Part shown: positions 1 through 64,000 of the stretch, in pieces
How the letters are laid out: each line of letters opens with the position of its first letter
Position numbering within the stretch: position 1 is the stretch's first letter
Origin: Macrostomum lignano
Lineage: Eukaryota
Length of the DNA stretch: 64,000 nucleotides
NCBI GenBank assembly: GCA_002269645.1
Contig: NIVC01000166.1
Coordinates: 124,001 to 188,000, forward strand
Reading direction: 5' to 3'
Notes under the pieces: model-generated
Told to the model about the DNA's origin: nothing
Databases searched by the model: none
Seen by the model: only the letters and a program-made list of their open reading frames with translations
Program-made: the position numbers and the translations under genes

Positions 1-569
1 TTGTCAAATATATATTGTAGTAGTTCTCCGCCTGAATCGGCATTGCCATAGTCTATAAGGTACACAAGGGCGCGCATGCCCCTGTAAGCCTAATATGACG
101 ACAATATGAATAATATATAAATAGTGATGGCATGAATAGTATAAACATAATAGCAAGGACAAAAATAATTAAAATAATTGATAGCTTAGAATAATCCTAT
201 TGCATCCGTTCGGTGTTGCCGAAGTCGATGAAATGTATAAGAGCGTCACCTCTGACGTTAATACCCCAAAGCCACATAATGTGCATTATACGGTTGGTAA
301 TTAAAGCATAACTACTGGCGACGAATTAAACTCATAAATAACTCAAAAAGAAAATAAAAACTGAAAAAAGCCATTGAAAACTCGGAAAAAAATGCATATA
401 GGAATATAGCTAGCTCAGTTCGCTACTCAGCCCATTGACGAGTGCAGCAGCGCCACCTTCGTCAAAAATTATTTGCAGATTTTGGTCATATTTCGCAAAT
501 TTCATAGTATAGCTATCATAGGTATATATTTGTGGGGCAAAAGTAAGCACTACACACACACACACCGCA

Positions 570-860
570 CGCACGCTTTCTTCTGCCTTTGGCGCGTAGC
601 GCCATCCTCTGCCTTTGGCGCGTGGCGCCGTTCTCTGCCTTGGCGCGTGGCGCCGTTCTCCGCTTGGCGCGCTGCGCCGTTCTCTGCCTTGGCGCGCTGC
701 GCCGTCTCCGCCTTGGCGCGCTGCGCCGTGTCTCCGCCTTGGGCGCTCTTGCGCCGTCTCCGCCTTGGCGCGCCGCGCCGTGTCTCCGCCTTGGGCGCTC
801 CTGCGCCGGTTTCCTTCCGCCTTGGCGCGCCGCGCCGTGTCCCGCCGCCCTTGACGCTTG
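570..860. repeat. GC/CpG-rich degenerate minisatellite (~20-22 bp units, core GCCTTGGCGCG..GCGCCGT) in the Gypsy 3' UTR
   Basis: Tandem units are visible directly; a homologous array lies at ~52170-52580 on the opposite strand. Confidence 0.85.
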
Positions 861-1393
861 GCGTCGTTTGCCCGCAGTTGTCCGGACTGTGTCTCTGTGC
901 CGTGCCTCTGCTCTGCATCCTTTGCCTCATCCATCTGTCATCCTTGTTCTGTGTTTTGCCTCATCCATCGTATCACTTCTGCGCGTCCGTTTGTCGTTTT
1001 TATGATCGCGCGCCGCGCGCTCTGTTCCGCGCTACTTTGTGACCATTATCATATTTTGTTATGTTTTGTAACGCCACCATACTATGCTACTCGCGCTCAC
1101 CGCGCTCTACTGCTCTGTAATCCACCTACCGTCTCCTTCGTAATGTTCTGTAACTTTCTGTAATCCTACCACCTGTTCTGTAATTTTGACTTCGATTATT
1201 CAGCCACTTGTAAGCCTGTGGGTTAGTAATCCCTAAGGCCTCCAGTAATCATATACTCACATAAACTAACTCAACTCCACTGTAATTCATTCTACTGTAA
1301 TTTCATATGCTGCGGTCATGCTGTGTTTCTGCCGTCACCCCGCGTGTTGGTTTTCTTTTGCGTGGCCCTATCCTTTTTCGGAAGGGAGGCGGG

Positions 1394-2225
1394 TGTGACG
1401 TTGTCAGTTAAAGGTGGTCCCGAAAAGGGCCGCTGGACTATATTTTCCCTTGTAATTTCTCATATTAATTTCTCCAATAGTTTATTTTAACGTTTACTTA
1501 TAGTAGCGTGCAAATAATTTTTATCAACTGCTAATTCACTGTGTATTGGATAGACCTTGCGCCCGTCTGTAAATTTTGGCACGATCGATAATTTTAAGTT
1601 CTCTCGCCAGCCAATGAAAACCACTCGTGCTTCGCGCTACCCCCCTCTGCGCTCCTTTATTAAACCCCCTGCCTGGCGGCGGGCACTCCACCTTCCTCTC
1701 TCCTCTCTTTCTTATCTGTTCTTCCGTCCCCTTTTGCGTTCTTGTCTGGCTGCCTCGAGCCTCCTTATTTCTCGCCACGGCCCCTCTGTCTGGGCCGGCC
1801 TACTCACACACTTACTTGACTGCCTGCCACTGTCTGCCACGGCTAACGCCAATCTCACCACTACGCATCTGCCACTATTGTACTCATCGCCGTCTGTTGT
1901 ACTCATCGCCGTCTGTTGTACTCATCGCCGTTACTCACCACGTTGCATCGTCTTGCATCACTCGCCTACCACTCGACTACAATCTCTAACTCACCTTCAA
2001 TTCAAAACCATTGTTGCAGCCGCCAGTGCCCAAAGCGCAATAAGTTCTATATTGATATTAACCGCATCGAATATTGATCTCAACAATAATAACCAACTAC
2101 GGCCAGTTTCCGGCCTTGTATGCCAAGTGCTCCGCTACACAAATCCGCTATCAAGACTTGACTCGATTCATTTGGGACTAAAACGGCCCTTTTAAGGGTC
2201 ACGGACAACATCAAATAACGTGACA
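1394..2225 (+). repeat. 3' LTR (TG...CA, ~832 bp)
   Basis: TG/CA termini, preceded by a polypurine tract at 1380-1393, homologous to the LTRs at 50860-51689 and 58631-59459. Confidence 0.9.
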
Positions 2226-2435
2226 GTATTCTCATAATTCAATGGGAATTAATCGTTGTAAGTGTGAAATGGGGAGATTGACCGAAATGAAGCGAGGATG
2301 AGCGAAGCGAGTTGAGCGAAGTGAAGACGAGCGATAATGAAGGGAAAAACGAGTCATTTCACACTGATAAAGGGTTAAATCGTTTTGAATTATGAGAACG
2401 GTTTGCTGGCAATTTTGTACCGTCAATATTATTCT
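2226..2435. mobile_element. Outer ~210 bp of a Polinton right terminal inverted repeat (second copy of the family)
   Basis: Near-identical to ~59608-59800. The terminus is a variant (…AATATTATTCT versus …ATATTACTACT). Confidence 0.9.
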
Positions 2436-34453: not shown

Positions 34454-34459
34454 TAAAAA

Positions 34460-34774
34460 ATGAACCGAGTTTACACCTTTTCTGTTAGTGATACTTTTGA
34501 GACTGTTGCTAAAAATGCAGAGATAATAAAACAACATATTTTGAATGGAATAATTGATGAAGTTTATTTAAAGTATGATGATAAGCACGACCTAAAACTT
34601 TATCCATTAGAGTTGGATGGGATGTATGATTTAGAACAAGAGGGTGAGTTAATATTTCAACTTGGAGATTATTTAAATTCGGATGATTGGGAGGTTCGTT
34701 CAGATGATTCCAACTCAACAAATAGCTCATATGAAACTAGTGATTCTGAGAATGAAATTGAAATTTTTATGTAA
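34460..34774 (+). CDS. Viral hypothetical protein, acidic C-terminus (104 aa)
   Basis: ORF with TAAAAAATG start context directly inside the TIR. Confidence 0.6.
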   Translation: MNRVYTFSVSDTFETVAKNAEIIKQHILNGIIDEVYLKYDDKHDLKLYPLELDGMYDLEQEGELIFQLGDYLNSDDWEVRSDDSNSTNSSYETSDSENEIEIFM

Positions 34775-45749: not shown

Positions 45750-48700
45750 TTAGTTTTTTTCAAGCGCTAGTTCATCAATATCGAACTCAAAACAATTATA
45801 ATCAACATCAAATAGTAAACTGTTATAATATTCAATTGAATGTTCGTGTTGCGGTTTGTCATCAAAATAGTTTTTAAAGAATGGTTTCATAACTCCGTTT
45901 TTATCCGGTTTTTCTCTTTTAAATGTGTTTATCGTAGAAGTATATGTTTTTGATATGGTTGAACCGCTTTGAGGAATTATTATACCACCTTCAAACGTTC
46001 GTTTCCACGGAGCATTATTATTTACTTTTATTTTGACTGTCCATCATATAAAGTTTTAAACGATGCAAAATTAATCTTATCATTTGCACATCCTTTAAAT
46101 GTTTTTTTCTCTTCCATAATAAAATCATCTTTCAACAAAAGACAATATTTAATTTTAGGAGCGATAAAATATCCGAATATAATTCCACCCTCTCCATAAT
46201 CGTTTTTTCCTTGACTTAAATTATTTCCAACATGACCGTTTTTATTTAATGTGTCCCAATGTTTTTTATGTATATATAACGAATCCGTATCGCCGTAATA
46301 AATTTCTGGAGTCTTTGAACCATCTATAGAGGCGATAAAATTATTCATTATCCTTCTTGAATGAGCTAAGATAAATATTCCTAATTGTGCCGGACAAAGA
46401 CCTGTTGTAGGATTATCATCCTCTTCTAGATATTCTTGTGTGTCTTTCTTTTTTTCAACATAATATAAATCGTCACATATTTTCTCATATGACTTAATTG
46501 TGTCATCGTATTCTGTTTTTAATGTATTCAAATTCCAGAGATGCGTTGTGAAAGTAATGTCTCTTTGAACCGTTTTACCATATAAGGAATTTAACAATGT
46601 TTTTACTAATTCAGAACCCGCCTCGTTATTTTCTTTTTTAAATACTTTTCTCATTTCAAAAAGGGTTGTAATATAATTCTGAAACGGAGAGAAATCGTAA
46701 TTTTTTTCATATATAATTCCACTATATATCTTTAATATTTTTCCACCCATTCTTACAATTTCTTGTATGTCTACGGAACATAAGGTGTCGATTACCTTTC
46801 CATTTCTAAACCTATTTAATGTTTTTGTTTCGTTTGCTTTTGTTTCCGGATTATAAAATTTCTCTTTATCTTTCGATGGGAGATGTTGAAGAAAAACGGT
46901 GGTAGGGTTCTCATACATAATCTTTAAAACCGCTGTTTTTGGTCGAAAGGTTTGTGAATTAAATTGTGTCAAAAAATCCTTTTCCTCGCTTATATCAAAA
47001 ACTCTGGCTGTTTCTGCTCTTGGATATTCACTATCCTTATCAGACATAGCAGATGGGTACAACGAGACTCCATCAAAATTCATTAAACAATCTGATACGG
47101 TACCCAATTGGTTTTTTAATTTAATTGCGATTTTCTTTTTTTCTTCCATATCGCTTTTGAGATAAGTTGATATAACCTCGCATGGGTCGCTTGTTGGTAT
47201 TTTTAAATGGTCTTTTACAACGTCTACAATTGTTTGAAAACAGTCACTTTCGTATTTATTTATTAGTGCAAATACTCTGCCTCCTTTGACTGCGTCCCTC
47301 ATAAACTTTCTTATATAAGGGTTGGTATGAGAGTGAACCGAAAATTCTTTTCTTAATAGTGTTTGATATTTTGCTTTATCAAGTTTGCTCAAGTCAAAAT
47401 AATCTTCGATTTTCAGAGGAGATATAATTTCTTCAACTTTTTTAATGTAATTACTTTTTTCTTTTGTCTTTAGGTATTGTTTCATTTTGTCTTCAACTCT
47501 AACAAAATCTTTAAACCAACATTTTAATGTTAAGCTCGAACATGTAAGAGCATCAAACATTGTCATTCCTCCAATTTCATATGCTATTTCATTATACTTA
47601 TGAATACAGGCACATAAAGAAATAAGATCAAATTGTAAATATTCATACCATTCATCCATGCGCTCTAGGTAGTCGTGTTCGGTAATGTCGTGAACCATTG
47701 ATGTCTTGCGCAAATCCTCTCTAATTGTCATTGATGAGCAAAACTTTTTTAAACTCATTGATGCGTGTTGATATGAACAAAGCATTGTAATGGTTTGTTT
47801 CGAATCCTTGTGATTCTTCTTCTTATCTTTGTTTATAAACGCACTAACCTCTTTTGACATATAATCGTTTACAAAAGTGATTGATAATATTCCTCTTGAG
47901 GTTTTAAGAATTTTAATTGGTTTTATATTACAAAATAGTGGTATGTATGAATCGAAGCGGGATGAGTTGTGTGCGATCAAAACAATCTTTTTTGACCTAA
48001 CTGTACCAAGGTATTTAAACATTTTTCTAACACAGTCAACCTTTGGTTGCGAACCTTCGGTACGATCGGACTCCATCCGCGAACCTTTGGTTCGATCCAT
48101 TTTATCTCCATCTGTTTGAAAATCACAACCGCGATCTGATATCAAGATCTTAGTTAGTTTCTTTATTGTTTCTGGGGTTTCGTTACAATTATTAGAAAAG
48201 TCGTTATAGTTTAAAAGACCAACTGCATACGGGCATGCTTGTTGATTATAATTTAAATATGTTTCAAAATCAAATATGTATACATTTGATTTATTGGGAT
48301 TTGTGGGTGTATTAAACATTTTTATCTCTTTAACATTTTCAGACGTTGGGTTTTTAAATACTACTTTATAATTGTTTTTTATCCGTTCAAGACCGATTCC
48401 TCGTTGTTTATTAGATATAAGACAATAATGACCAATGTGGTAATCGGGTGTGTGATAGTAATTTATTAATAACCAGTCGTGGTGAATCCCTCTTTGAGAC
48501 TTTGGTTCAATTCCACGATTATTAGGATTATACAGCCCTATATTAAGATTAAAATATTCGTTGAATTTTCCAATTCTTGAATTTGTCATTAATCCTCTTT
48601 GGGTTCTTGAGTCGTACAACCAACCACCATATTCGTCTTTGGATGGGGCTTTATCACCATAAATAAACTGAACACACTTGTAGAAACAATTTCCATCACT

Positions 48701-49180
48701 AGGTATGTAGCAGTACTCATCTTTATACTCTGCAATTTCACACATGACATTTGTGCCCATACCCTGCTTTGACCTTTCGTGTTTAAGTGTGATTTCGTTT
48801 GGTGTCATTTTAAGTCTTCCAGAAAACACACTTAAATTCATGTCGTAGTTTTCTACCAAATGCTTAAACCAAGCTTGAAATTGACTTATATTATAAAATG
48901 TTGCTAAGTATTGATTAATCTCTTCGCGATCATCTCCGGTTTTATTATAAAAATATTGTACCCTCGCATTAGTAATTTCAACACTATATCCGTTTGAAAG
49001 CTGGGTTTCAATAAAATCTAGGACATTCTGCATTGGTTCAAATCGATAAACCCTAATAAACTCATCTAATGATTTTTCATTCGATTTATTCTGCGCTTTC
49101 CGACGTATTTGTTTCTTTTGGTTTTTTTCTAATTCTGCTATTCTTTTTTCATATTCAGCCTTTTCTATTAAACGCTTCAT
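45750..49180 (-). CDS. polB: Protein-primed family B DNA polymerase; apparent 1-nt frameshift at ~46035 cuts off the last ~90 aa
   Basis: Exo motifs FDFET, HNSSRFD and LQFD; polymerase motifs DGVSLYPSAM, KTLLNSLYGK and YGDTDS. A second frame continues APWKRTFEGGIIIP… to a TAA at 45752-50. Confidence 0.93.
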
Positions 49181-50468: not shown

Positions 50469-50859
50469 TTAAAATTTTTTTAATCCTTTTCCGCCTTTAA
50501 TAGTGGTTAACATTTTATTAAAATCCTGAATATCTTTATTACTTATTGGCGTGGTTTTCGTGGGGGTTTCTGTTGGTTGTGCGGCTTGTGCCAGCTTTAA
50601 ATCTTTTATTGCATTTATTTGTGAGAGGGTGTCGTTAAAATCTCTCAATTTCTTTAGTTCTTCTGCCGCTCTAGTTGCTTCAATTCCTCCTTTTACAGCA
50701 TTTGTTATAGAACCTGCTGCGGAGCCTGCTTGCCCTATAAGACCCATATTGTCTTTAACAAAATTCGCTGCTGTTCCAACCACATCAAAAAGTCCCTCAC
50801 CTCGGTATTCAATTGGGTCTCCTACCTGCAATTCGTTCAGATTTTGCATATGAGTAACG
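50469..50859 (-). pseudogene. First gene inside the right TIR, split by the Gypsy insertion (true start ATG at 59471-59469)
   Basis: Removing the Gypsy and one TSD copy gives AAAAA-ATG ACA CAC GTT ACT CAT ATG CAA (MTHVTHMQ…), in frame with ORF 50849-50469. Confidence 0.8.
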
Positions 50860-51689
50860 TGTCACGTTATTGGCGTAGCGGCCAGCTATGCGGTGACCCT
50901 TAAAAGGGCCGTTTTAGTCCCAAAATAAGTTGAAGTCAATTCTTGTAAAGCGGATTTTGTAGCGGAGCACTTGGCGATAAAGGCAGGAACTGCCGTAGTT
51001 GTCTTTATTGTTAATATCAGTATTAAGTTTGGTTGTTACTGGCAATAAACAGACTATAGCTTTCTGGGCACTGGCGGCTGCAGCAATGGGTTGAATATAA
51101 TTTGGATATGAAGTCAAGTGGCAGGCGAATGACACAATGGCGACGTGACGTGAGCAGTGGCTATGATCACAGTGAATGCAGTGAAACGTAGTGGTGAGTT
51201 GGCGTCGGTCGTGGCGTGAAACAGTCAAGTAAGTGTGTGAGCAGGCTGGCCCAGACAGAAGGGCCGTGGTGAGAAATAAGGAGGCTCGAGGCAGCCAGAC
51301 AAACAGATAAGACAACTAAGAGGCCGCAGGGAAGGAAACAAGGGACAGGTGGAGGAGAGACGAAAAAGGGGTGAGGGGTGCCCGCCGCCAGGCGGGGGGT
51401 TTAATAAAAGAGCGCAGAGGGGGGTAGCGCGAGCACGAGTGATTTCATTGGCTGGCGAGAGAACTTAAAATTATCGATCGTGCCAATTTTATACGGTTGC
51501 GAGAGAGGATAGCAAAATATACAATGAATTATAAATTGCCACAAAATCGTTGGGCACTACTACAAGTAAACGTCGCAATAAACGAATGGAAAAGTTTAGT
51601 TGAAACGGTGAAACTGAAGGGTTGAATGACTATGGAGAACAGCAGTCCAACGGCCCTTTTCGGGACCACCTTAAACTGACAACGTCACA
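50860..51689 (-). repeat. 3' LTR (830 bp)
   Basis: Near-identical to 58631-59459 (one substitution and one G-run indel noticed). Confidence 0.95.
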
Positions 51690-51703
51690 CCCGCCTCCCT
51701 TCC
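51690..51703 (-). promoter_or_regulatory. Polypurine tract
   Basis: GGAAGGGAGGCGGG on the minus strand adjoining the 3' LTR. Confidence 0.85.
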
Positions 51704-52169
51704 GAAAAAGGATAGGGTCGCGCAAAAAGAAAACCAACACGCGGGGTGACGGCAAGAAAAACACAACGTGACCGCAGTTTATGAAATTATAGCAGAGTGA
51801 ATTACAGTGGGGTTGAGTCAGTTTGTATGAGCATATGATTACCGGACAAAATTACAAAGTTCCAAAGGCTACAGACTATTACGAGAACAGAACATTACAG
51901 GGCAGTAGAACACGGTGAGCACGAGCAATACAACATGGTGGTGTTACAAAAACATTACAAAATACAGCAATGGTTACGGAAAGTAGTGCACGACGGAGCG
52001 CGCGGCGCGCGCGAACACAAAAACGACAAAGGACGCGCAGAAGTGATACGATGGATGAGGCAAACACAGAACAAGGATGACAGATGGATGAGGCAAAGGA
52101 TGCAGAGCAGAGGCACGGCACAGAGACACAGTCCGGACAACTGCGGGCAAACGACGCCAAGCGTCAAGG

Positions 52170-52580
52170 GCGGCGGGACACGGCGCGGCGCGCCAAGGCG
52201 GAGAACGGCGCAGCGCGCCAGGCGGAGACGCGGCGCAGCGCGCCAAGGCAAAGAACGGCGCAGCGCGCCAAGGCAGGAAACGGCGCAGCGCGCCAAGGCA
52301 GGAGAACGGCGCGGCGCGCCAGGCGGAGAACGGCGCAGCGCGCCAAGGCGGGAAACGGCGCCACGCGCCAAGGCAGGAAACGGCGACAGGGCGCCACGGC
52401 AGGGAACGGCGCCACGCGCCAAGGCAGAGAACGGCGCCACGCGCCAGGCAGAGGATGGCGCTACGCGCCAAGGCAGAGGATGGCGCTACGCGCCAAAGGC
52501 AGAGGACGGCGCTACGCGCCAAGGCAGAGGACGGCGCAGCGCGCCAGGCGGAGGACGGCGCTACGCGCCAAAGGCAGAGA
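52170..52580. repeat. GC/CpG-rich minisatellite in the Gypsy 3' UTR
   Basis: ACGGCGC(AG/TA/CA)CGCGCCAAGGC units. Confidence 0.85.
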
Positions 52581-53587
52581 GAGCGTGCGTGCGGTGCGGT
52601 GTGTGTGTGTGTAGTGCTTACTTTTACCCCACAAGTATTATATCTACCTAGTGTTTATGGAATTTGCGAAATTTAATGATCAATTGCAGTTGATTTTTGA
52701 AGTAAACGACGCTGACCTGATCAGCCAGCTGCGCAGCGTTACGCTGCACTCGTCAATGAGCTGACCAGGGTCGCGCTGCACTGAGCTAGCTATGTTCCTA
52801 TATGCATTTTTTCGAGTTTTCAATGGTTGCTTTTTCAGTTTTTATTTTCCTTTTTGAGTTATTTATGCGTTTCACTAGTCGCCAGTAGTTATGCTTTAAT
52901 TACTAACCGTATATTGCACATTATATGGTTTCGGGGTATTACTATTAGCGTCAGGGATGACGCACTTATTCATTTCATCGACTTTGGCAACACCGAACGG
53001 GTGCCATTGCTATCAATTATTTAAATCATTTTTGCCATTGCTATAATGTTTATACGTGCCCTAGTGTATTTTATCGATTATGGCAACGCCGATGCAGGCA
53101 GAGGACGTCTACAGAATATTTTGACAACTGTTATATTTATAGTATTCATCTCGTAATCATTTTTCGACCAATATATGCATTATTTTATGCCATATTTATG
53201 CATTAATTTTTTAGTTTACTTTTGAATATTTGAGCTAAGGCTAATGTCTTATCTACTATTTGTTTCTAGCGCCGTAGTGTATTCTATAGACTACGGCAAC
53301 GCCGACCAGGTGCAGTCGGAGTTGGGTGCTGCGATATTATATATATTCTTGCGTTAGAACAATATAGTATTTATACTGTCGGCATATTATGCTAATTCTG
53401 CTAGTGTTTTATTTTTATTTTATTTATTTTAGTTAGCTATATAAATTATCAAATTGCAATGTCGCTGCAGTTTATCCCCTTGACTACGGTGGTTGGCTGT
53501 TGGCTGGTACAGCTGTGGAAGTTGTGCACACTAGTATCTGGCAGTGAGTAACAGCTGTGGCTTGTGTTTTGTGGCTTGCGGCTGGCA

Positions 53588-53815
53588 GATGCCGCAGGGA
53601 CCTGTGACCAACAGGTGCCACAGGAGGTAGTTTAACGCCTTGCCCGGGGCGTGAGCTTGCGGTCTACAGGTGCCGCAGAGACCTGTGGCTGACAGGTGCC
53701 ACAGGAGGTAGTTTTACGCCTTGCCCGGGGCGTGAGCTTGCGGTCTACAGGTGCCGCAGAGACCTGTGGCTGACAGGTGCCACAGGAGGTAGTTTTACGC
53801 CTTGCCCGGGGCGTG
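53588..53815. repeat. 81-bp tandem repeat x~3 just downstream of pol
   Basis: CAGGTGCCACAGGAGGTAG recurs at 53612, 53693 and 53774. Confidence 0.85.
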
Positions 53816-53827
53816 AAAAACTGGCGG

Positions 53828-56800
53828 TTAGTGTCTGCTTCCCCACTGCTGGAGCAGGTCGGACACTTGACAGGTCCGGTACCTGACAGGCGGGCGGATG
53901 GGGCGTCCGTACCTGGATCTGGGTACGTCAGCCGGGGCTGGTGGCTCAGCTGCTTGCGCAGCGACTGGATTCGCAGCAATCTCAGGTGGTTCTAATTGCT
54001 CGGAGGAAGGGTCCCCCAAGGAAGCCGTGTACAGCGACTCTGAGCTGTCTTGGCTGTGGCTGGTGTCAGTGTCTGTGCTGTCAGTGTCAGTGTCTGGTTG
54101 TGGCTGTCCCTCAATAACTACAGCATCGCCAGCTTCGGCGAATGGTTGGCCTTCTCCCGCTTCAGCTCCCGCCCCCTCCTCAAAGGCGCCTGAAGCTGGC
54201 GGTGGTGGATTTGGCCCTGGCGCTCTGCGTGGGCTCTCTGGCCGGGCAGAGGAAGGCTGGGGAATGGTGACGAGGCTAAGCTCGCTCGCGGGTCCGCTGG
54301 GCGGGTTCACACTAGGCGCTGGAGACCTGGCATGGGTGGCCTCACCATACCGGTCAACTACGTCTTGGTAAGTGGGCTGTCTGATGCACGGTTTGAGGCG
54401 GTCAATGTTGTAAATGTTATGGCGCGGATTTGGCACCCGATCTGCTGGGTTTAGGAGACCATACTCGGGACTAAACGGTAAGTCCGCTCGGAGCAGCGCT
54501 GCACTACTCGGTATGGCCCCAACCACACAGCGGGTTCTATGCCCTTGTGGTTCGGGTTCAAGACCCAGACTAACTCTCCCTCGTGGAACTCAGCGCGGAG
54601 GGCGCGGCGGTCGTAATACCTTTTCTGCCTCTCCTGGGCTTTACCCCTAGTGCGGCGGGCTAGGGCAGAGGTTTCGACTAGCGTGCGGTGCAACTGGTGG
54701 GCGTACCTCTCCGGCTGGTAGTGTTCATTTGGCGGTGGATTGTGACAGAGGTCGAGCGGTAGTTCGAACTCACGCCCGAAGAAAAGTTTGGCTGGAGTAA
54801 ATCCGGTGGATTCGGCGACTGTGGCACGGATTGACAGGGCGGCCAGGCGGCTGGCAAGGGGCCAGTCGCATTGTCTCTCAAGACAGATGGCTCTAATCTG
54901 GGCTTTCACCGTCTGGATCATCCTCTCAGCTTTACCGTTAGCCTGAGGGCGACGGGCTGTGATCCGACCCATGTCAATCTGTAGGAGCCTAGTTAATTCT
55001 ATCATGGTACTATTGATGAAGGCAGTTCCGTTATCAGACACCAGCTGCTCCATCACCCCATACCTGGCAACCCATTCAGTCAGGATGGTTGTGGCAGTGG
55101 TCTCTGCGCTGACGTCGGGAACAGGGACTACTTCAACAAACCCGGTGAACCTGTCGATCATAACCAGCAGGTACTTGTACCCGTCACACTCTTCGAACGG
55201 GCCTGCGTGGTCCACGTGGACAACCTGGTTCGGGTAGCCGGACAGTTCTGGTTGCATAGGGGCCTTGAGCTTACGCTTTGACTTCTTAGTCTTAGCGCAA
55301 ACGGTGCATTCGGCCAGGACCCCCTTGACTATAGTATCTAAGTCGGAAATAACGAAGCGCGCCTTCAGGGCGGCCATCGTCTTGGTGATACCGCAATGGT
55401 TCAACTGGCCATGATACTGAAGGACCAGATGACCGACGTCTGCGGTCTCAGGCACCACCAGGCGCCTGTTGGCAGTCTTGGCTTTGGAGGATTTGGCTAA
55501 GTACAATAGACCCTCGACTACTTCAAGGTCATTGAATTGAGCCCAGAGTGAGCGCATTTCCCGGCTACAACCCTGCAGTTCGGCCTTGGACAATGGCTCA
55601 GTCTTACACTGGACACTGGCGATTAGGCGCGCCATGTCAACACAGGAGTCCTGGGCATTCTGGGCCCAGATGAGCTCAGGTGGCACTTGGGATTCGGTTT
55701 CAGGTTGACGGGATTCAGTCTCTGGGCTAGGAACAGCACCGCTAGCAGTAGCGCGGACATTCGGCGTTGGTTCAGCCGGGGCATCTGTGTCAGTCTGACA
55801 CGCTACGCTAATGCCTATGGTCTGGACGCACACCTGACGCAGTTCTCTAGAGGGGGGCGTACGCCGGTGCTTTGGGTCTTGGTCCAGGAATTTCCCTTTA
55901 AATTCCGGAATCTGGCTGCACGTCGGGCAGTCAAAGTGATCGGCTCTGAATTTTGGCAGTCTACTAAGAGCGTCAGCAGGCACGTGGTCAACGCCTGGAC
56001 GGTACTGGACTGTGAAATCGTATTCGGCTATTCGTTCTAGAGTGGACTGCTGGACCTTCAGCGGGTACAGTTCAATGGTGGCAAGCCATTGGGCCAGCAT
56101 ACCAGTGGCATGCTTCTTAGAATGCAGCCATTTGAGCGCGGCCGCGTCCACCCGGACAGTGAAAGGCTTGTCTAATAGATAAGGACGGAAATGCTCGAGC
56201 ATCAGAACGAGCCCTAGCAACTCCCTCATGGTGGCGCAGTAGTTTCTCTGGCTACTGTTGAATTTTTTGGATGCGTAAGCTATAACTTGCTCTTGGCCAT
56301 CTGGCCCGAGCTGGTACAGCACACCCCCAGTGCCGTCAAGCGAGCTATCGCAGTCCAAAATAAATTCGCGCCCTTTGGCAGAGAGGTCTGGATACGCCAG
56401 AATCGGTGGTGAACAGAGGCTATGTTTGAGTTCTTGGAAAGCCCGTTCATGATGCGGTTGCCATAGAAACGGAGCATCCTTTTTGGCTAAGGCATACAAA
56501 GGCGTGGCGATGATTGAGAATCGCGGCACGAATTTCCGGTAATAATTCGCAAACCCAAGAATGATAGAAGCTGTTTCTTAGAAAGCGGTTTAGGCCAGTC
56601 TTGGACAGCCTGAGTCTTCGCTGGGTCAGCCTCAATGCCCCGGCTAGACACAACGAACCCCAGGAATGCGACCTTGTCCTTAAACAGCTCACACTTAGAC
56701 GGCTTAATTTTGAGACCGGCTTTTCTAAGCTGCCAGAGGACCAGCGCGAGATGCGCGATCATTTGGTCGTTGTTGACAGCCTTAATGATAATGTCGTCTA

Positions 56801-58312
56801 AATAGATGAGGCTGACCTTCATCAGGAGAGGTCTAAACACCTTGTGCATCAGTTTCGCGAAATTGGCAGGTGCCGTCTTGATCCCGAATGGTACTACCTT
56901 CCAGCGGAAGGTGCCTTGGGGGCAGGCAAAGGCGGTGTAATCTCTAGCCTCCTCTTTGATCCCTACCTGCCAGTACGCGGAGGTCAGGTCAAGGCTAGAG
57001 AATACAGTGGCCCCGGCAAGGCTGTCAAAAGATTCTTCTATGAGTGGCAGAGGGAAGCTACACGGCTTGATGAGCTTATTGACGGCCCTATAGTCTATGC
57101 AAAGGCGTTGAGTGCCGTCCTTCTTCTTGACCAGAACGATAGGCGACACCCAGTCAGAGTCACACTCCTCAATGACCCCCTGTTCGAGCATCTGCGCTAT
57201 GTTCTGGTCTAAGAATTCTTTTTGTGCTGGCGTGGTGCGCCTGTATGGTTGCGCAACAGGCTTGGCCTTAGGATCTATTAACTCTATGCCCATCTCGTGT
57301 AAATTGGTGTGGCCTAAATCTGCGTTTGATCTAGAAATTTGGCTATTGAAGTAGTTGAGCAGTTTCAAAACGGTGGCGAGTTGGCCCCTAGACAATTTGG
57401 CTTGGTCTAGTTGGAACTGCGTTGTCAGCCATTTGGCTAACTCCCTACTGGCGGCGGCAGCTTACTGAGTTGGCTGGTGAGGTTAGCTACATTGTCCAGG
57501 CTAAAGTCAGACTCCTTCAGGGTCGTCTGAGCTATGACCTCATGACTATCTAATTCCTGGAATGAGGCAATTTCTTGCCCCCTAGTTATCTGAATAGGCT
57601 GTTCCCCACTGTTGAGCACGCGCACTAGTATGTGGTTAGTATCGCTAACTGAGTCTAGAGTCTTGGCTACCAACTGTTCGGTCTCTGGTCCGAGGATCCG
57701 GGACATGACTATACCGGAGGTGTACGGCGAAGAGTCGAGGACACGACTGGGGATCAAGGTTTCCGAGTGCGGGGGCAATTCTACCGTGCCGGCGGCCATC
57801 ACTCGTCGGAGTTGGAAAATCCCCTTGTCCCCCTCAATGACTGGTACCGACACCCCTGCTACTAAAGCTCGGCCAGAGTTGAAGTCTAGCAGCATCTCGA
57901 AGCTGCGCAGGAAATCCATGCCTAACAGGGCTTCCGTGGTACAGTAAGCAGTGACTAGGAATACATGTTGTTTAGTCGTATTACCTAAGTTGATTTCGCA
58001 GCGTAGCGACCCTAGGATGTCTACCTGAGAGCCGCCGAAGGCGGTGGCACGCTGCTTATTGGCACTAGGCGTGAATATGTTATTGACGGGGTCAGCTGCG
58101 ACCAGTTTGGCTTTCACGTCAGCACCCATGATGCTGGCATTGGCGCCTGAGTCTAGACAGGCCAGAACTTTAGAGTCTCCTACTCCTAGCTGCACGAAAC
58201 GACCAGCGACGACTCGCGGCGACGAGCGAAGACCGGCCGAGCAGTCAGGACCCCTGGGCCTGACGTGGCACAGGCTCTCGTAGCCTTGCGGACCGAACCT
58301 CAGGCGTGGCAC
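53828..58312 (-). pseudogene. pol: Gypsy pol (aspartic protease, RT, RNase H, integrase with GPY/F) broken by about three frameshifts
   Basis: LDSGA (protease), YLDD (RT), DCDSS…ELLG…DAAAL (RNase H), H..H..C..C and VDHAG/SDNG/AER (integrase), WLGPY. Frames change near 57430, 56570 and 54480. Confidence 0.92.
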
Positions 58313-58418
58313 AGACTCTCGCAGCCTTGCGGACCGAACCTCAGGCGTGGCACAGGCTCTCGTAGCCTTGCGGACCGAACCTCAGGCGTGGCACAGGCTC
58401 TCGCAGCCTTGCGGACCG
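58264..58418. repeat. 41-bp tandem repeat x4 where gag would be
   Basis: CGTGGC recurs at 58264, 58305, 58346 and 58387. Confidence 0.85.
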
Positions 58419-58607
58419 TCAGGCAGAAACGTGGCAGGCCGGCACTCAGTCACGAGCCGGCAGAGCTGAGCAGAATCTTGCTGACGCTTGGTTGCGAGCT
58501 GGCAGGGCTGAGCAGAAGTCTTGATGGCGCTGATTACGAGCTGGCAGGGCTGAGCAGAAGTCTTGATGGCACTGACTTAGTTGCGAGCCGGCAGTGCTGA
58601 GTAGGAG

Positions 58608-58624
58608 TCTCGGTGGGACCTCCA
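58608..58624 (-). promoter_or_regulatory. Primer-binding site complementary to the tRNA-Gln 3' end
   Basis: Minus strand TGGAGGTCCCACCGAGA, 6 nt from the 5' LTR. The plus strand TCTCGGTGGGACCTCCA matches the known metazoan tRNA-Gln 3' end. Confidence 0.85.
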
Positions 58625-58630
58625 AAATTA

Positions 58631-59459
58631 TGTCACGTTATTGGCGTAGCGGCCAGCTATGCGGTGACCCTTAAAAGGGCCGTTTTAGTCCCAAAATAAG
58701 TTGAAGTCAATTCTTGTAAAGCGGATTTTGTAGCGGAGCACTTGGCGATAAAGGCAGGAACTGCCGTAGTTGTCTTTATTGTTAATATCAGTATTAAGTT
58801 TGGTTGTTACTGGCAATAAACAGACTATAGCTTTCTGGGCACTGGTGGCTGCAGCAATGGGTTGAATATAATTTGGATATGAAGTCAAGTGGCAGGCGAA
58901 TGACACAATGGCGACGTGACGTGAGCAGTGGCTATGATCACAGTGAATGCAGTGAAACGTAGTGGTGAGTTGGCGTCGGTCGTGGCGTGAAACAGTCAAG
59001 TAAGTGTGTGAGCAGGCTGGCCCAGACAGAAGGGCCGTGGTGAGAAATAAGGAGGCTCGAGGCAGCCAGACAAACAGATAAGACAACTAAGAGGCCGCAG
59101 GGAAGGAAACAAGGGACAGGTGGAGGAGAGACGAAAAAGGGGTGAGGGGTGCCCGCCGCCAGGCGGGGGGTTTAATAAAAGAGCGCAGAGGGGGTAGCGC
59201 GAGCACGAGTGATTTCATTGGCTGGCGAGAGAACTTAAAATTATCGATCGTGCCAATTTTATACGGTTGCGAGAGAGGATAGCAAAATATACAATGAATT
59301 ATAAATTGCCACAAAATCGTTGGGCACTACTACAAGTAAACGTCGCAATAAACGAATGGAAAAGTTTAGTTGAAACGGTGAAACTGAAGGGTTGAATGAC
59401 TATGGAGAACAGCAGTCCAACGGCCCTTTTCGGGACCACCTTAAACTGACAACGTCACA
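58631..59459 (-). repeat. 5' LTR (829 bp)
   Basis: TG…CA, adjacent to the PBS. Confidence 0.95.
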
Positions 59460-59489
59460 AACGTGTGTCATTTTTTGTTCTATTTTTAG

Positions 59490-59814
59490 TAACAGAAAAA
59501 GACCCTTCGCGCCTGCGGCGCGTGCGAGGGGTTATAGAGAATTGGAAGTGTTAGAAGTGTTGGGTGCGCTACAAAATTGCCAGCAAACCAAAGCGAACGA
59601 CGAGAGCGTATTCTCATAATTCAATGGGAATTAATCGTTGTAAGTGTGAAATAGGGAGATTGACCGAAATGAAGCGAGGATGAGCGAAGCGAGTTGAGCG
59701 AAGTGAAGACGAGCGATAATGAAGGGAAAACGAGTCATTTCACACTGATAAAGGGTAAAACTGATTGAATTATGAGAACGGTTTGCTGGCAATTTTGTAA
59801 CGTATATTACTACT
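59490..59814 (-). repeat. Right TIR of the Polinton (325 bp)
   Basis: Inverted copy of 34129-34453. Confidence 0.95.
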
Positions 59815-62800
59815 TTGATCTTCTCCTGGCTATTCCCCCTCGTGATGGCATTCGGGACCTTCGGTAACGCCTCGTGCATACTGGTGCTCCTGCGAAGACC
59901 AAAGTGCTTTCCTTTCTCTGTCCGGCTCAGCATGCTCAGCTGCTGCTTCGTGGACTTCCTGCTCGTCGCTGTGAAGTCCGTCACGCACTATTTGTCCCCA
60001 GTCGTCATGGGAACAATCCTAAACGTTAGCGACTATAGGAGGACCTCGAGCTTAGCCGTGTGCATCTTATACTACTGGCTAACCATCTGGCTTCTGCATG
60101 GTAGCTCGTTTTTCCGTCTGGGCCTCTGCTTTCACTCGCTTGCCGTGACTCTGGTCCCACTCAAGCAGGCCACGTTGCTATGCAAAAGGAACGTGGCACT
60201 GTACCAGCTGCTACTGCTGCTGCTGAGTCTTATACCCTGCACCAGGATGTTCAGCACCTACTGGGTTGTTGAGTTACACAAATGCTTTTTCTATGAGGAC
60301 TGGATCGAGGTTTTCTACAGGATATTCACGGTGTTTGTAGGCCGAATCGTAGTGGTAGTGTGTCTGTTGGTGACCCTGCTGGTCATCTTGCTGGGCGTAA
60401 GGCGCACGCGGGACCACCTGCGCGGATCGGTGATCTCTGTCGGTAGTTCTCGCGCTGCTGGGCCTCAAACCAGGGCGGTGACCAGCATCTTTGTGATGAC
60501 TAGCGCCATTTTCTTTGTGTGTGAAATGCCGTACAGCATACTGAGAATGCTTCAGACGCTGGAGTTAGTCAATTGGACAAGGATGCTCAGCTACATTGCT
60601 CTTCCGCTGAATGGTCTGATGTACGTAAACCCGGCCCTGAACTGGCTGCCCTGCCTGATTGGAGCAAAGTTCCGGCTCGAATACATGAAGATGTTCTGCT
60701 GCTTGTGCTGCCGGTCTCAAGACAGGTCCAGATTCGACGACATGTCAAATATACAGCGGTCAAATCAGCAGAGAGCAACCACTAGTACCTAAGCGATGCA
60801 GTCTGCCTGATGAGATAAATAGGAATCTAACTTGGTTCCGACAAAAACAAGTATAAAAAAATCTAAAAGCCCTCTGAATTTAAGAGGTCCCACATTGTCA
60901 ACTCATCAATCACTCTGTCCACAACACTATAGCTACAATTTAGCTTTTCAAGCCAGCTGCCACGTAATCCAAACAAGACTGTTAGAAATTGAAATATCCC
61001 TTTATCACCTTCCTATAATCTTATTTTGTTTTCTTCGTTTTTTCGAACACGAAGCACTATTTAAAACTATACAGTCTCAATCTATTTAAAACTATTACAG
61101 GCTTAATTGCTTTGTGTATGCACGTAAAACTTTGCAAACGTTATCTACTTAGCTTGAAAGCAGCTGTATCCATTAAAACGCTTGCTTGAAATCAAGACGT
61201 AAATAACGATCACGGTATACAGTGAACTTTTTTAAATAGCTAACCTGATAAAAGACGCTGAATGTCGAAATATGTCCTTAATAGATGTTTTTCGTGTAAA
61301 ATACATAATGTAAACTGAGAATTAAAACCTAAAAAACTTGCACTTTCCAGATTTAAGTGAGAAAAATCAAGCACATTCAGCAAAATTGACTCATCATTCT
61401 TTGCGATAGTTTCTTCTCGGGCTGGTATGAGCTAAAAGATCGCATAATGAAGTTGCAACTTGTTTTTTTCTACTACTTTTAGTAAGAAACGGAGCATCTA
61501 GGCAATTGCATTATCTCATCTCATCTAAAAATTTTAAAATTGTTTTTGGGCTTTGGAAGAACCAGTAAACTTAGAACTTTTTATGCGAAGTATAATGCAA
61601 AATTAGGAAAAATAAAAGAACAAATCCTTGTACTCGTATATTTCTGGTATTGTACATTTGTTAGTTTGCAACCGGAATGCTAACTAAATGAAGACTGCTC
61701 AGAGAAGGCTCACTCGAACCCCAGTCAAAGGACGCCTTAAATTACACGTCAAGAAAAGATCATTCTTCATTTGATGGCGGTTGAACCCGTCCTTAAAAAT
61801 GCATTTTCTTAGAGATTTAGAACAAGATTTTTTTATCGTTTCGTAATTTTGAGTCATGTCTGTCTTAGTAGACTTCTTTTCAATTTTACAGTTGCAGTAA
61901 ATTTTATTGGGGTTTTACTTCACGTGCCATCATCATTTGTGATTGCGTAACAATGAGAGGTCGTTGAGCACTTTAATGTATCCAATGAAGTTCCTTATTT
62001 ACTCCAGTTGCTGAATATGGTAAGTGACAGAAATTGTTGAAACGAAATCAAATTCAATGCTTTATTTTTGTTTAACAGAATGCTGCACTGACTTCACAAA
62101 CGATTGAACTTCTTCAACTTTTCATAGGCTCGACTAGGAGAGGGGGCTGTTCCAGTAAAATATCCTGTAAAATGCTATAATTCCATAACACTTAAAAAAA
62201 GAAGAAAATACTTTTTCTTGGCTCTTTACTTGTCAACACACGGAGTAGACGACGTTCAGATAGGTAGCAAATGTGGAAACCTTGCAGTCGAAGTAGCCAT
62301 GATGACCCACTCCATTTTTATACATTAATCAGCTGTCAACTCCTCAAGCTGTCTTTCATTACGGCTGTGGCTAAATTCAAATCAAGCAGGAAATGGAAAT
62401 GCATAGCCAATGAACGCAGAGTTGAGGTGAATAGCTTCTACGGACTGGCTGAGACTGGACTGGTCCAGTGATGAAAAAATGTTTTATATGAAGAATATAA
62501 AAACATACCTGCCTACCGACAGACCATTTTTAGTATACGGAAGTAGCGGATATCATATTAAGATGCTCGGTATCTGAAACAGAATCTAAACAGCTATTTG
62601 AAAACCTCGAAAATATGGTGGTGAGTAAATTCTGCGGGGCCTGGCGCTTCTTCTTAAAACCGGGCAGAATAATTTACGATTTCATCCTTTTAAAAGCTCT
62701 TCAGCCTGAATAATGACGTGGGTAAAAATTCAAAGAATAATTTCTCACATCCCTCGAAGTATAGGAATAAGATAAAATTTTAATAATCACAGGATGGCTG

Positions 62801-62939
62801 TAAGCCACCCTGATGCCACGCCTAAGACGACAAAATCCCACAACCATCGCTGAGGGAACTCTGCCTATTCCGCTGTCTTCTGAGCACATACAGTCGCGCT
62901 AATGCGACTGTATTCATCATCAATTAGAATTTAATATCC

Positions 62940-64000
62940 TCCATTGACTAGACCTCCGCATCCTCATTAACTCGACCTCCGCATCCTCATCAACTAGACC
63001 TCCGCATCCTCATCAACTAGTCAGCATCCTTCATTAACTAGACCTCACCATCCTCATCAACTAGACCTCATCATCCTCATCAACTGGTCAGCATCCTCAT
63101 CAACTGGACCTCCGCATCCTCATTAACTAGACCTCCGCATCCTCATCAACTAGTCAGCATCCTTCATCAACTAGACCTCACCATCCTCATCAACTAGACC
63201 TCATCATCCTCATTAACTAGACCTCCGCATCCTCATCAACTAGACCTCCGCATCCTCATTAACTAGACCTCCGCATCCTCATCAACTAGACCTCCGCATC
63301 CTCATTAACTAGACCTCCGCATCCTCATCAACTAGACCTCCGCATCCTCATTAACTAGACCTCCGCATCCTCATCAACTAGACCTCCGCATCCTCATTAA
63401 CTAGACCTCCGCATCCTCATCAACTAGACCTCCGCATCCTCATTAACTAGACCTCCGCATCCTCATCAACTAGTCAGCATCCTTCATCAACTAGACCTCA
63501 CCATCCTCATCAACTAGACCTCATCATCCTCATTAACTAGACCTCCGCATCCTCATCAACTAGACCTCCGCATCCTCATTAACTAGACCTCCGCATCCTC
63601 ATCAACTAGACCTCCGCATCCTCATTAACTAGACCTCCGCATCCTCATCAACTAGACCTCCGCATCCTCATTAACTAGACCTCCGCATCCTCATCAACTA
63701 GACCTCCGCATCCTCATTAACTAGACCTCCGCATCCTCATTAACTAGACCTCCGCATCCTCATCAATTAGTCAGCATCCTTCATCAACTAGACCTCACCA
63801 TCCTCATCAACTAGACCTCATCATCCTCATTAACTAGACCTCCGCATCCTCATCAACTAGACCTCATCATCCTCATTAACTAGACCTCCGCATCCTCATC
63901 AACTTGACGCTCAGCATCCTTCATCAACTAGACCTCATTATATCCTCATCGACTAGTCAGCGGCCAGCATCTTTCATCAACTAGACCTCAGCATCTTTAT
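62940..64000. repeat. 23-bp satellite (CTAGACCTCCGCATCCTCAT(C/T)AA) with variant units and higher-order pattern; runs off the window end
   Basis: Direct tandem repetition, with alternating CATCAA/CATTAA units and recurring CTAGTCAGCATCCTTCATCAA variants. Confidence 0.95.

What the first reader, a model, noticed from the sequence alone, without database searches (positions are those of the whole stretch)
52950..53510. Retrotransposon 3' UTR carries an antisense array of Tudor-domain signature motifs: possible anti-piRNA device
Seen: four spaced GC-richer islands on the strand opposite to pol encode DALIHFIDFGNTERV (~52960), RALVYFIDYGNAD (~53055), AVVYSIDYGNAD (~53270) and AVYPLDYGG (~53467), separated by AT-rich spacers. 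Islands 2 and 3 lie in 36-37-aa ATG ORFs (53046-53156, 53244-53357). Islands 2-4 also fold as ~8-9-bp stems with 11-nt loops (e.g. GCCGTAGT/ACTACGGC). Established: [FY]-[IV]-D-[YF]-G-N-x-E is the aromatic-cage hallmark of Tudor domains, Tudor proteins are core piRNA-pathway factors, and Drosophila TART-A captured an nxf2 fragment that yields piRNAs against that gene. Inference: element transcripts are antisense to the most conserved codons of host Tudor mRNAs and could generate small RNAs that damp the silencing pathway. Alternatives are decoy micropeptides or a repeated RNA structure.
Basis: partly seen in the sequence, partly recalled or inferred. Interest (0 to 1): 0.8.

Follow-up and report, generated by a model that had tools for sequence, protein, structure and literature searches.

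The report
Tudor-motif coding islands inside a retrotransposon
A young Ty3/gypsy retrotransposon carries, on the strand opposite its pol gene, four short pieces that encode the most conserved hairpin of Tudor domains (core piRNA-pathway proteins); a second, diverged copy shows changes almost only at silent codon positions, so the pieces look selected, but how they act is not settled.

Summary

A profile of the islands finds almost only Tudor proteins: 13 of 16 PDB hits, and 167 hits at E<=1e-3 among 1.84 billion proteins. All 7 hits sampled are multi-Tudor PF00567 proteins.

A second, diverged copy at window 1-2202 carries islands 1 and 2. In their 24 core codons, 8 of 9 differences are synonymous (P=4e-5). 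Flanks have 12- and 65-nt indels. Among the islands of one copy, flanks are no more alike than shuffled sequence.

The repeated-hairpin idea fails: only island 3 folds better than shuffles.

Best reading (confidence 0.4): a captured, amplified fragment of a Tudor-gene exon, kept in codon register and probably read as peptide from antisense RNA. The small-RNA anti-piRNA idea has precedent (TART-A/nxf2) and could not be tested, because no host genome was available. Free third codon positions argue against its simple form.

The parts
50860..51689 (-). 3' LTR of element A (830 bp, ends TG...CA). The 4-bp target-site duplication AACG lies at 50856-50859 and 59460-59463.
   Evidence: 99.76% identical to 58631-59459; termini and duplication.
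51690..51703 (-). Polypurine tract (GGAAGGGAGGCGGG on the element's sense strand), directly next to the 3' LTR.
   Evidence: also present in copy B.
52030..52200 (.). About 170 nt with no substitution (two 1-nt indels) between copies A and B, just before the 25-nt repeats.
52172..52580 (.). 16 copies of a GC-rich 25-nt tandem repeat (GGCGGAGAACGGCGCAGCGCGCCAA).
52657..52764 (+). 'Unit 0', a small ATG ORF (MEFAKFNDQLQLIFEVNDAD...). In copy B it is fused in frame to a 174-aa Arg-rich ORF. No Tudor similarity could be shown.
52956..53003 (+). Island 1, DDALIHFIDFGNTERV. Flanked by cag| and |gtg. No in-frame ATG in copy A.
   Evidence: (Pfam TUDOR E=0.025).
53046..53156 (+). 36-aa ATG ORF that contains island 2 (RALVYFIDYGNAD, 53055-53093).
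53244..53357 (+). 37-aa ATG ORF that contains island 3 (AVVYSIDYGNAD, 53271-53306). The hairpin GCCGTAGT / ACTACGGC is at 53271-53297.
53464..53493 (+). Island 4, AAVYPLDYGG. It is in a different frame, is degenerate (N to G, F to P), and has no in-frame ATG.
   Evidence: 24 bits, E=1.4e-6.
53574..53816 (.). Three copies of an 81-nt tandem repeat, directly downstream of the pol stop.
53828..58312 (-). pol, split into four ORFs, each in a different frame from its neighbour. Protease 57437-58312, RT 56487-57395, RNase H-integrase 54451-56529, C-terminal piece 53828-54526. There is no gag: only about 430 nt separate the 5' LTR from the protease domain.
58631..59459 (-). 5' LTR. A primer-binding-site-like TGGAGGTCCCACCGAGA lies just inside it, at about 58608-58624.
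1..2202 (+). Copy B, the 3' end of a diverged relative in opposite orientation. LTR 1241-2202 (72-74% identical to A). Island B1 at 250-203 and B2 at 74-36, both read on the - strand. Cut off by the window edge.

Best explanation
What it is (about 0.8). The islands are descendants of a short coding piece of a Tudor-domain gene of the germline TDRD/Tudor type. The piece is the beta3-beta4 hairpin that supplies half of the aromatic cage. It was taken into the pol-to-3'LTR spacer of a Ty3/gypsy element in antisense orientation, probably as genomic DNA (one small exon with bits of its introns), and was multiplied to four copies. It is a stable part of the element family, not a one-off.

How it works (inferred, about 0.4 for the statement as a whole). 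Selection holds the islands in codon register. First and second codon positions stay fixed while third positions and the surrounding spacers drift. The simplest cause is that an antisense transcript of the element is translated across each 12-17-codon core, either as 26-37-codon ORFs or as micro-exons. The hairpin peptide itself would then be what matters, plausibly through some interaction with the host Tudor/PIWI machinery.

Shown: Tudor origin, position, retention in two lineages, and the codon-register substitution pattern.
Inferred: capture as exon plus intron, antisense transcription, translation, and any effect on silencing.
For: - Tudor origin. The island profile hits Drosophila Tudor, TDRD3 and TDRD1 chains at the beta3-beta4 position (13 of 16 PDB hits). 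It gives 167 hits at E<=1e-3 among 1.84 billion representatives. All 7 sampled are multi-domain PF00567 proteins. The hits that carry names are 'maternal protein tudor' or TDRD1. Local matches reach 63-100% identity over 10-21 aa.
- Part of the element. Both copies A and B carry islands 1 and 2 between homologous spacers.
- Codon register. In the 12-codon cores, A versus B gives 8 synonymous and 1 non-synonymous difference (pS 0.41 and 0.61; pN 0 and 0.04). Permutation gives P=4e-5 for synonymy and 5e-4 for third position. The two control frames give 1 of 10 and 2 of 10 synonymous.
- Not coding on the element's sense strand. The minus-strand ORFs break off in or at the island cores, and reading the sequence by eye puts a stop inside each core in the only frame where silent positions of both strands coincide (my reading, not a tool result).
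- Island against spacer. Cores of the different islands of copy A are 69-83% identical, while their 50-nt flanks are at shuffle level. The A/B spacers carry 12- and 65-nt indels.
- Exon-like edges. Islands 1 and 3 are bounded by cag|/tag| and |gtg, with the same phase and lengths of 46 and 40 nt.
- In-frame ATGs. A2, A3, B1 and B2 each have an ATG 1-12 codons upstream of the core.
Against: - No gene model is consistent across islands. A1 and A4 lack an in-frame ATG. B1 has lost the GT. A2 and B2 have no GT at the core edge. The supposed exons all share one phase and so cannot be joined in series.
- ATG context (4 of 6 islands) is not significant against a baseline of 0.30-0.36 (P about 0.1).
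- Only half of a Tudor fold is encoded. No beta1-beta2 partner was found (Pfam 15 bits against a cutoff of 23; unit 0 has no Tudor match). A free hairpin peptide has no known function.
- Only the cores are conserved between A and B. The rest of each small ORF is not.
- Third positions differ more (8 of 24) than the aligned spacers do (about 10%). Plain purifying selection does not predict that.
- Everything rests on two copies and nine substitutions.
Confidence: 0.4

Rival explanations
1. Small-RNA or antisense-RNA counter-defence. The element's own mRNA is antisense to the captured Tudor exon. Sense piRNAs or siRNAs cut from it target host Tudor/TDRD mRNAs and weaken the silencing pathway. 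Only the exon part is kept because only it pairs with the mature mRNA.
For: - There is direct precedent. TART-A carries four patches of nxf2 (63-228 bp, 93-96% identical) in its 3' UTR and yields piRNAs against nxf2 (PMC7785250).
- Drosophilid telomeric elements repeatedly captured, and sometimes amplified, aub and piwi fragments (PMC13534243).
- Here the fragment comes from the piRNA-pathway Tudor family, sits in the 3' spacer, is antisense to the element's mRNA, is multiplied four times and is kept in two lineages.
- Conservation stops at exon-like AG/GT edges.
- Third-position divergence above spacer divergence would fit a chase after a host gene that can escape only by silent changes.
Against: - Two copies in the same genome differ at 3 of 36 and 6 of 36 island positions, almost all third positions. 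The longest identical run in island 2 is about 8-11 nt. Both copies cannot match one target.
- Selection for pairing should hold all three codon positions.
- Islands are only 36-48 nt, far shorter than known captures.
- Island 3 is locked in a stable hairpin of -19.9 kcal/mol.
- No host sequence could be compared.
Confidence: 0.28
2. Inert relic. A host Tudor fragment was picked up and duplicated by accident and is decaying. The silent-site pattern would be chance, or would come from exchange of patches between islands that already differed mostly at silent sites.
For: - Gene-fragment capture by transposons is common, and most captures do nothing (established knowledge).
- Island 4 is degenerate, and island 3 has lost the cage aromatic residue (F to S).
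- No coherent ORF or splice model exists.
- Three of the six B2-specific variants also occur in other islands, so some patch exchange is possible.
- The A/B region is a mosaic with local identity ranging from 74% to 100%.
Against:
- The three A1/B1 changes cannot come from any known island of the array.
- Cores stay 69-83% identical while flanks fall to shuffle level. Uniform decay would not produce that.
Confidence: 0.15
3. A repeated RNA or DNA structural element (a hairpin with an 8-9-bp stem and an 11-nt loop), or a protein-binding site. The peptide resemblance would be a by-product.
For: - Island 3 has a perfect 8-bp stem, z = -3.5.
- Codons for A-V-V and D-Y-G are reverse complements of each other, so this motif easily becomes a palindrome (read directly from the sequence).
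Against: - Five of six islands fold no better than shuffles. The A2 to B2 changes break one pair and are not compensatory.
- No Rfam family matches.
- The Tudor match of the encoded peptides is far too specific to be a by-product.
Confidence: 0.03

Closest known systems
TART-A capture of nxf2, and capture of aub and piwi fragments by Drosophilid telomeric retrotransposons (PMC7785250; PMC13534243)
   Same: - A retroelement carries pieces of a piRNA-pathway gene in its 3' non-coding region.
- The pieces come as several patches or amplified copies.
- The fragment is present in all copies examined (here, both copies).
   Different: - Those are non-LTR elements in flies. This is a gag-less Ty3/gypsy element whose nearest pol relative is from the flatworm Macrostomum lignano (59% identity).
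- Known captures are 63-228 bp or longer at 93-96% nucleotide identity to an identified host gene. Here the islands are 36-48 nt, the donor gene is unknown, and conservation is at the codon level rather than the nucleotide level.
- No small-RNA data are available here.
Antisense-strand accessory genes of retroelements: HTLV-1 HBZ, HIV-1 ASP, and extra antisense ORFs of plant Tat-type Ty3/gypsy elements
   Same: - Coding capacity lies on the strand opposite pol, in the region before the 3' LTR.
- An antisense orientation lets introns survive retrotransposition.
   Different: - Those are real ORFs of 100 codons or more, with a mapped antisense promoter and transcript.
- Here there are only 26-37-codon ORFs or micro-exon-like pieces, and no transcript evidence.
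Tudor domain, Pfam PF00567 (germline TDRD/Tudor proteins)
   Same: - The islands reproduce the beta3-beta4 signature x-A-[LV]-V-x-[FY]-[IV]-D-[YF]-G-N-x-[ED]. Island 3 also has the following V....L.
   Different: - Only about 13-17 of the roughly 60 core residues are present.
- There is no beta1-beta2 part and no SN-like extension.
- The score is below the Pfam threshold.
Tandem repeat arrays in the untranslated regions of LTR retrotransposons
   Same: - The same element has 25-nt, 81-nt and 41/42-nt tandem arrays in its non-coding parts.
   Different: - The Tudor islands are not a regular tandem repeat. Spacing is 99, 216 and 193 nt, flanks are unrelated, and a nucleotide profile finds no decayed extra units.

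Membership tests
Tudor domain (PF00567) coding sequence | Beta3-beta4 signature with the cage residues ([FY]-x-D-[YF]-G-N) | tested here: met
   The island profile retrieves Tudor proteins almost exclusively, aligned at this motif. Islands 3 and 4 have lost one aromatic residue.
Tudor domain (PF00567) coding sequence | A complete domain (beta1 to beta5, about 60 aa) that scores above the Pfam threshold in one reading frame | tested here: not met
   the best score is 15.1 bits against a cutoff of 23, covering HMM positions 68-97 only. The other islands give no hit. Stops and frame changes lie between islands. Unit 0 has no Tudor match.
Anti-silencing by capture of a piRNA-pathway gene fragment (TART-A/nxf2 type) | The element carries sequence derived from a piRNA-pathway host gene | tested here: inconclusive
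   The sequence derives from the Tudor family, and the best matches are germline Tudor/TDRD1 proteins. The donor gene and its role in this host are unknown.
Anti-silencing by capture of a piRNA-pathway gene fragment (TART-A/nxf2 type) | High nucleotide identity to the host gene over at least one small-RNA length | not testable with these tools
   No host genome could be reached. Tudor genes of unrelated animals match only at the level set by the amino acids (at most 22 bits).
Anti-silencing by capture of a piRNA-pathway gene fragment (TART-A/nxf2 type) | Element-derived small RNAs antisense to the host gene, and reduced host expression | not testable with these tools
   This needs small-RNA and RNA-seq libraries of the host.
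Anti-silencing by capture of a piRNA-pathway gene fragment (TART-A/nxf2 type) | The fragment is present in all copies of the element family | tested here: met
   Both copies in the window carry it, but n = 2. The 59%-related M. lignano element L001 lacks it.
Antisense accessory gene of a retroelement (HBZ/ASP/plant antisense ORF type) | Sequence on the antisense strand evolving in codon register | tested here: met
   8 of 9 changes are synonymous, P=4e-5, and the control frames are negative.
Antisense accessory gene of a retroelement (HBZ/ASP/plant antisense ORF type) | A coherent ORF or spliced gene model kept between copies | tested here: not met
   ATG, GT and frame are not consistently kept, and the ORFs are 26-37 codons long.
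Antisense accessory gene of a retroelement (HBZ/ASP/plant antisense ORF type) | An antisense transcript and its promoter | not testable with these tools
   No expression data are available. The promoter scanner offered is bacterial and was not used.
Ty3/gypsy LTR retrotransposon | LTRs, target-site duplication, PBS and PPT, and PR-RT-RNaseH-INT in that order | tested here: met
Ty3/gypsy LTR retrotransposon | A gag gene upstream of the protease | tested here: not met
   Only about 430 nt, mostly tandem repeats, separate the 5' LTR from the protease domain. The relative L001 has a gag-pol ORF that starts about 1.4 kb upstream of where its pol similarity to element A begins.
Structured RNA repeat | The same fold in all units, better than shuffles, with compensatory changes | tested here: not met
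   with the pair-by-pair reading.

The most novel reading that the evidence does not exclude
A retrotransposon encodes, from its antisense strand, a battery of very short peptides that copy the aromatic-cage hairpin of host Tudor domains. It uses them as protein-level mimics or poison subunits against Tudor-PIWI assembly. That would be a peptide-based counter-defence against the piRNA pathway, rather than an RNA-based one.
Probability: 0.1. Interest if true: 0.9.

Novelty: new variant of a known kind. Interest (0 to 1): 0.6.

Why it matters
Transposons that fight back against the piRNA pathway are known so far mainly from fly telomeric elements that stole pieces of nxf2, aub or piwi. An LTR element outside insects that keeps a multiplied fragment of a Tudor gene would widen the phenomenon in three ways: to another element class, to another animal lineage, and to the scaffold proteins of the pathway. 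Its nearest pol relative is from a flatworm.

The codon-register conservation adds a second possibility. It points to selection on the encoded hairpin rather than on nucleotide matching, which would be a mode of action with no precedent.

Either way the element gives a sharply testable case. There are four 40-nt islands, two diverged lineages and a very young active copy.

Tried and rejected
1. Repeated hairpin. Folding all six islands shows that only island 3 is significant. No Rfam family matches. Rejected.
2. Coding on the element's sense strand as the source of the period-3 pattern. Stops lie inside the islands in the relevant minus-strand frames (sequence read directly). Rejected.
3. One long decayed ORF across the array. 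The frame of islands 1-3 has fewer stops than the other two + frames. But the A/B spacers differ by 12- and 65-nt indels, and B1 and B2 are in different frames. Rejected.
4. Serial or mutually exclusive micro-exons joined to 'unit 0'. Phases do not fit in copy B, and unit 0 has no Tudor match. Not supported.
5. A regular 100-nt tandem array with decayed units between the islands. A nucleotide profile finds only the six known islands. Rejected.
6. Searching for more copies or for the host:
   - a chimeric island peptide against 5.8 billion proteins (nothing);
   - exact look-ups of five window ORFs (nothing);
   - a viral-contig scan with pol (nothing);
   - a host caspase ORF (best relative only 31% identical).
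7. The nearest relative, a Macrostomum lignano element with 59% identical pol. It has gag and 3' tandem repeats but no Tudor motif.
8. Tudor genes fetched from three unnamed ENA assemblies (L122-L124). They share no repeats with the window, and their nucleotide similarity is only what the amino acids dictate. They are not the host.

Full report
SETTING

The window is transposon-rich animal DNA. It holds:
- a piggyBac-type transposase;
- a non-LTR reverse transcriptase;
- a Maverick/Polinton with a protein-primed DNA polymerase;
- kinase and caspase genes.

The finding lies in a Ty3/gypsy LTR retrotransposon ("element A") on the minus strand.
- Its LTRs are 50860-51689 and 58631-59459: 830 bp, 99.76% identical, with TG...CA ends and a 4-bp target duplication AACG.
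- A primer-binding-site-like TGG... sits just inside the 5' LTR. A polypurine tract sits just inside the 3' LTR.
- Protease, RT, RNase H-integrase and a C-terminal piece occupy four ORFs, each in a different frame from its neighbour, between 58312 and 53828.
- There is no gag. About 430 nt, mostly 41/42-nt tandem repeats, separate the 5' LTR from the protease domain.
- The closest relative found is a Macrostomum lignano element with 59% identical RNase H-integrase. Its gag-pol ORF starts about 1.4 kb upstream of where its pol similarity to element A begins.

The 2.1 kb between the pol stop and the 3' LTR reads as follows on the + strand:
- polypurine tract;
- a block that is 100% conserved between copies A and B;
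- sixteen 25-nt GC-rich repeats;
- an AT-rich stretch with the four islands;
- three 81-nt repeats.

THE OBSERVATION

They sit in GC-richer islands (45-60%) separated by 15-30% GC spacers. Islands 2 and 3 lie in 36- and 37-codon ATG ORFs.

Chance does not explain them.
- The strict motif never appeared in 100 shuffles of the window.
- A profile built from the islands hits almost only Tudor-domain chains in the PDB (Drosophila Tudor, TDRD3, TDRD1), aligned at strands beta3-beta4.
- Against 1.84 billion representative proteins, the profile gives 167 hits at E<=1e-3.
- All seven hits sampled are multi-domain PF00567 proteins. The hits that carry names are "maternal protein tudor" or TDRD1.
- Local matches reach 63% over 19 residues (island 1 against an abalone tudor-like protein) and 100% over VYFIDYGNAD.
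- Pfam itself gives only a sub-threshold hit to island 1 (15 bits, E=0.025), because just a quarter of the domain is present.

The hairpin claim does not generalise.
- Island 3 forms a perfect 8-bp stem (z = -3.5).
- The other five islands fold no better than shuffles.
- Codons for Ala-Val-Val are the reverse complements of codons for Asp-Tyr-Gly. This peptide motif therefore becomes a palindrome whenever five third positions happen to agree.

A SECOND COPY

- Its LTR is 72-74% identical to that of A.
- Its internal part is 77-100% identical, depending on the segment.
- It carries island 1 (RGDALIHFIDFGNTERM) and island 2 (MRALVYLIDYGNADS) before the window ends.

So the array belongs to the element family and predates the split of two lineages. 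The more distant M. lignano relative lacks it.

SELECTION

In the two 12-codon cores, A and B differ at nine positions. Eight are synonymous third-position changes. The ninth is Phe to Leu.
- Permutation gives P=4e-5 for that many synonymous changes and 5e-4 for that many third positions.
- The other two frames give 1 of 10 and 2 of 10 synonymous changes.
- Just outside the cores, non-synonymous changes are as common as synonymous ones.
- The spacers carry 12- and 65-nt indels.

Within element A, the cores of islands 1-3 are 69-83% identical, while 50 nt on either side are no more alike than shuffled sequence.

The pattern cannot come from coding on the element's sense strand. The minus-strand ORFs break off in or at the island cores. 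My own reading of the reverse complement puts a stop inside each core in the one frame where silent positions of both strands coincide.

I therefore take it as likely, though resting on two copies only, that the cores have been held by selection acting in the Tudor reading frame.

ORIGIN

- Islands 1 and 3 begin right after cag/tag and end right before gtg. They have the same phase and lengths of 46 and 40 nt. The alignment of all islands shows that this GT-containing edge is ancestral and was lost by a 5-nt deletion in island 2.
- Together with the AT-rich flanks and the antisense orientation, this suggests capture of genomic DNA, one small exon with pieces of its introns. Simple template switching onto an mRNA would give the sense orientation. 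This is inference.
- The array is not a regular tandem repeat. A nucleotide profile finds exactly six islands in the window and no decayed extras.

MECHANISM

Two explanations remain in play.

(a) Translation. Free third positions with fixed first and second positions are the textbook sign of selection on a peptide.
- Four of six islands have an in-frame ATG 1-12 codons upstream. This includes B2, where a 65-nt insertion displaced the old ATG and a new one sits directly before the core.
- That ATG context is not significant (P about 0.1).
- A1 and A4 have no ATG, and no splice model works in both copies.
- The product would be only half of a Tudor cage, with no known activity.

- It has real precedent. 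TART-A holds four nxf2 patches of 63-228 bp at 93-96% identity in its 3' UTR and makes piRNAs against nxf2 (PMC7785250).
- Drosophilid telomeric elements repeatedly captured and sometimes amplified aub and piwi pieces (PMC13534243).
- It explains why conservation stops at exon edges.
- Selection for pairing should hold all three codon positions. Yet two copies in one genome differ at 8% and 17% of island positions, and the longest shared run in island 2 is about 8-11 nt.
- Rescue needs either different targets for A and B, or a very fast chase after a host gene that escapes only by silent changes.
- The slight excess of third-position divergence (8 of 24) over aligned spacer divergence (about 10%) would fit such a chase. 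The neutral baseline is uncertain, however, because A/B identity ranges from 74% in the LTR to 100% in one block.

I weigh (a) at about 0.4, (b) at about 0.28, an inert relic at about 0.15 and a structural element at about 0.03.

WHAT COULD NOT BE DONE

The decisive comparison, islands against the host's own Tudor genes, was impossible.
- The host proteome is not in the protein collections: a host caspase ORF finds only a 31% relative.
- Exact look-ups of window ORFs failed.
- Metagenome and viral scans found nothing related.
- Tudor genes fetched from three unnamed assemblies share no repeats with the window. They match the island profile only on their coding strand and at 22 bits or less, against 24-37 bits for the islands themselves. 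That is the level set by the amino acids alone.

VERDICT

- The thing is a retained, multiplied fragment of a Tudor-domain gene inside a young, gag-less Ty3/gypsy element.
- It is best filed as a new variant of the known "transposon captures a piRNA-pathway gene fragment" theme. The unusual twist is that what is conserved is the reading frame, not the nucleotide sequence.

Noticed in passing
window 52030-52200 (copy B: about 985-818, - strand): About 170 nt with no substitution (two 1-nt indels) between copies A and B, although neighbouring segments differ by 4-25% and the LTRs by 26-28%. It contains a duplicated GATGGATGAGGCAAA motif and the start of an Arg-rich ORF. It is either a strongly constrained element or a recent exchange between the two lineages.
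   Followed up: partly
window 52172-52580 (copy B: about 600-860): Sixteen 25-nt GC-rich repeats, each with a small palindrome GGCGC-AGC-GCGCC. The GCGCGCCAA core recalls E2F-type sites (from memory, not tested). The repeats keep ORFs open in two frames on each strand. In copy B a 174-aa Arg-rich ORF (934-410, - strand) runs through them and continues in frame into 'unit 0' (MKFAKYDQNLQIIFDE...).
   Followed up: partly
window 53828-58630: Element A has no gag, and its pol is broken into four ORFs, each in a different frame from its neighbour (boundaries near 57395-57437, 56487-56529 and 54451-54526). Yet its LTRs are 99.76% identical. It is either a very recent non-autonomous copy that used helper proteins, or the assembly has indel errors.
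   Followed up: partly
window 34129-34465 and 59477-59814: These are 338-nt inverted repeats, 98.8% identical. They look like the terminal inverted repeats of the Maverick/Polinton (integrase 35013-36266, ATPase-like 39399-40154, polB 46028-49180). Element A is therefore nested inside the Maverick, close to its right end.
   Followed up: partly
window 2218-2431 compared with 59600-59809: Copy B abuts a 94% identical copy of the same Maverick-end sequence, 16 nt from its LTR. Both copies of this LTR family therefore sit in Maverick terminal repeats, at different points and in different orientations. This may be a target preference.
   Followed up: no
window 4325-9050 (-) and 11206-16261 (+): An inverted duplication of a gene cluster encoding a split protein-kinase domain followed by caspase (Peptidase_C14) domains. 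The + copy also has ankyrin repeats between two caspase ORFs. The caspase has no close relative in 5.8 billion proteins (best 31%).
   Followed up: partly
window 53574-53816 and 58264-58619: Three 81-nt repeats lie right after the pol stop. 41-nt (x4) and 42-nt (x3) repeats lie in the 5' leader. The non-coding parts of this element are built almost entirely of tandem arrays.
   Followed up: no
window 53271-53297: The perfect palindrome of island 3 exists because codons for Ala-Val-Val (GCC GTA GT.) are reverse complements of codons for Asp-Tyr-Gly (.AC TAC GGC). The reverse strand of this island therefore reads AVVYRIHYG. This is a trap for motif searches on either strand.
   Followed up: yes
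window 59815-60792 and 26606-27610: Two copies, 98.4% identical over at least 386 nt, of a repeat with a 325-334-aa ORF that has no Pfam match.
   Followed up: no
window 62910-63959: A satellite-like array with a 23-nt period and a higher-order spacing of about 297 nt, with strong negative GC skew.
   Followed up: no
window 19668-21890 (-) and 30316-31791 (+): A non-LTR RT-RNase H ORF of 740 aa, and a piggyBac-type (DDE_Tnp_1_7) transposase ORF of 491 aa that looks intact.
   Followed up: no
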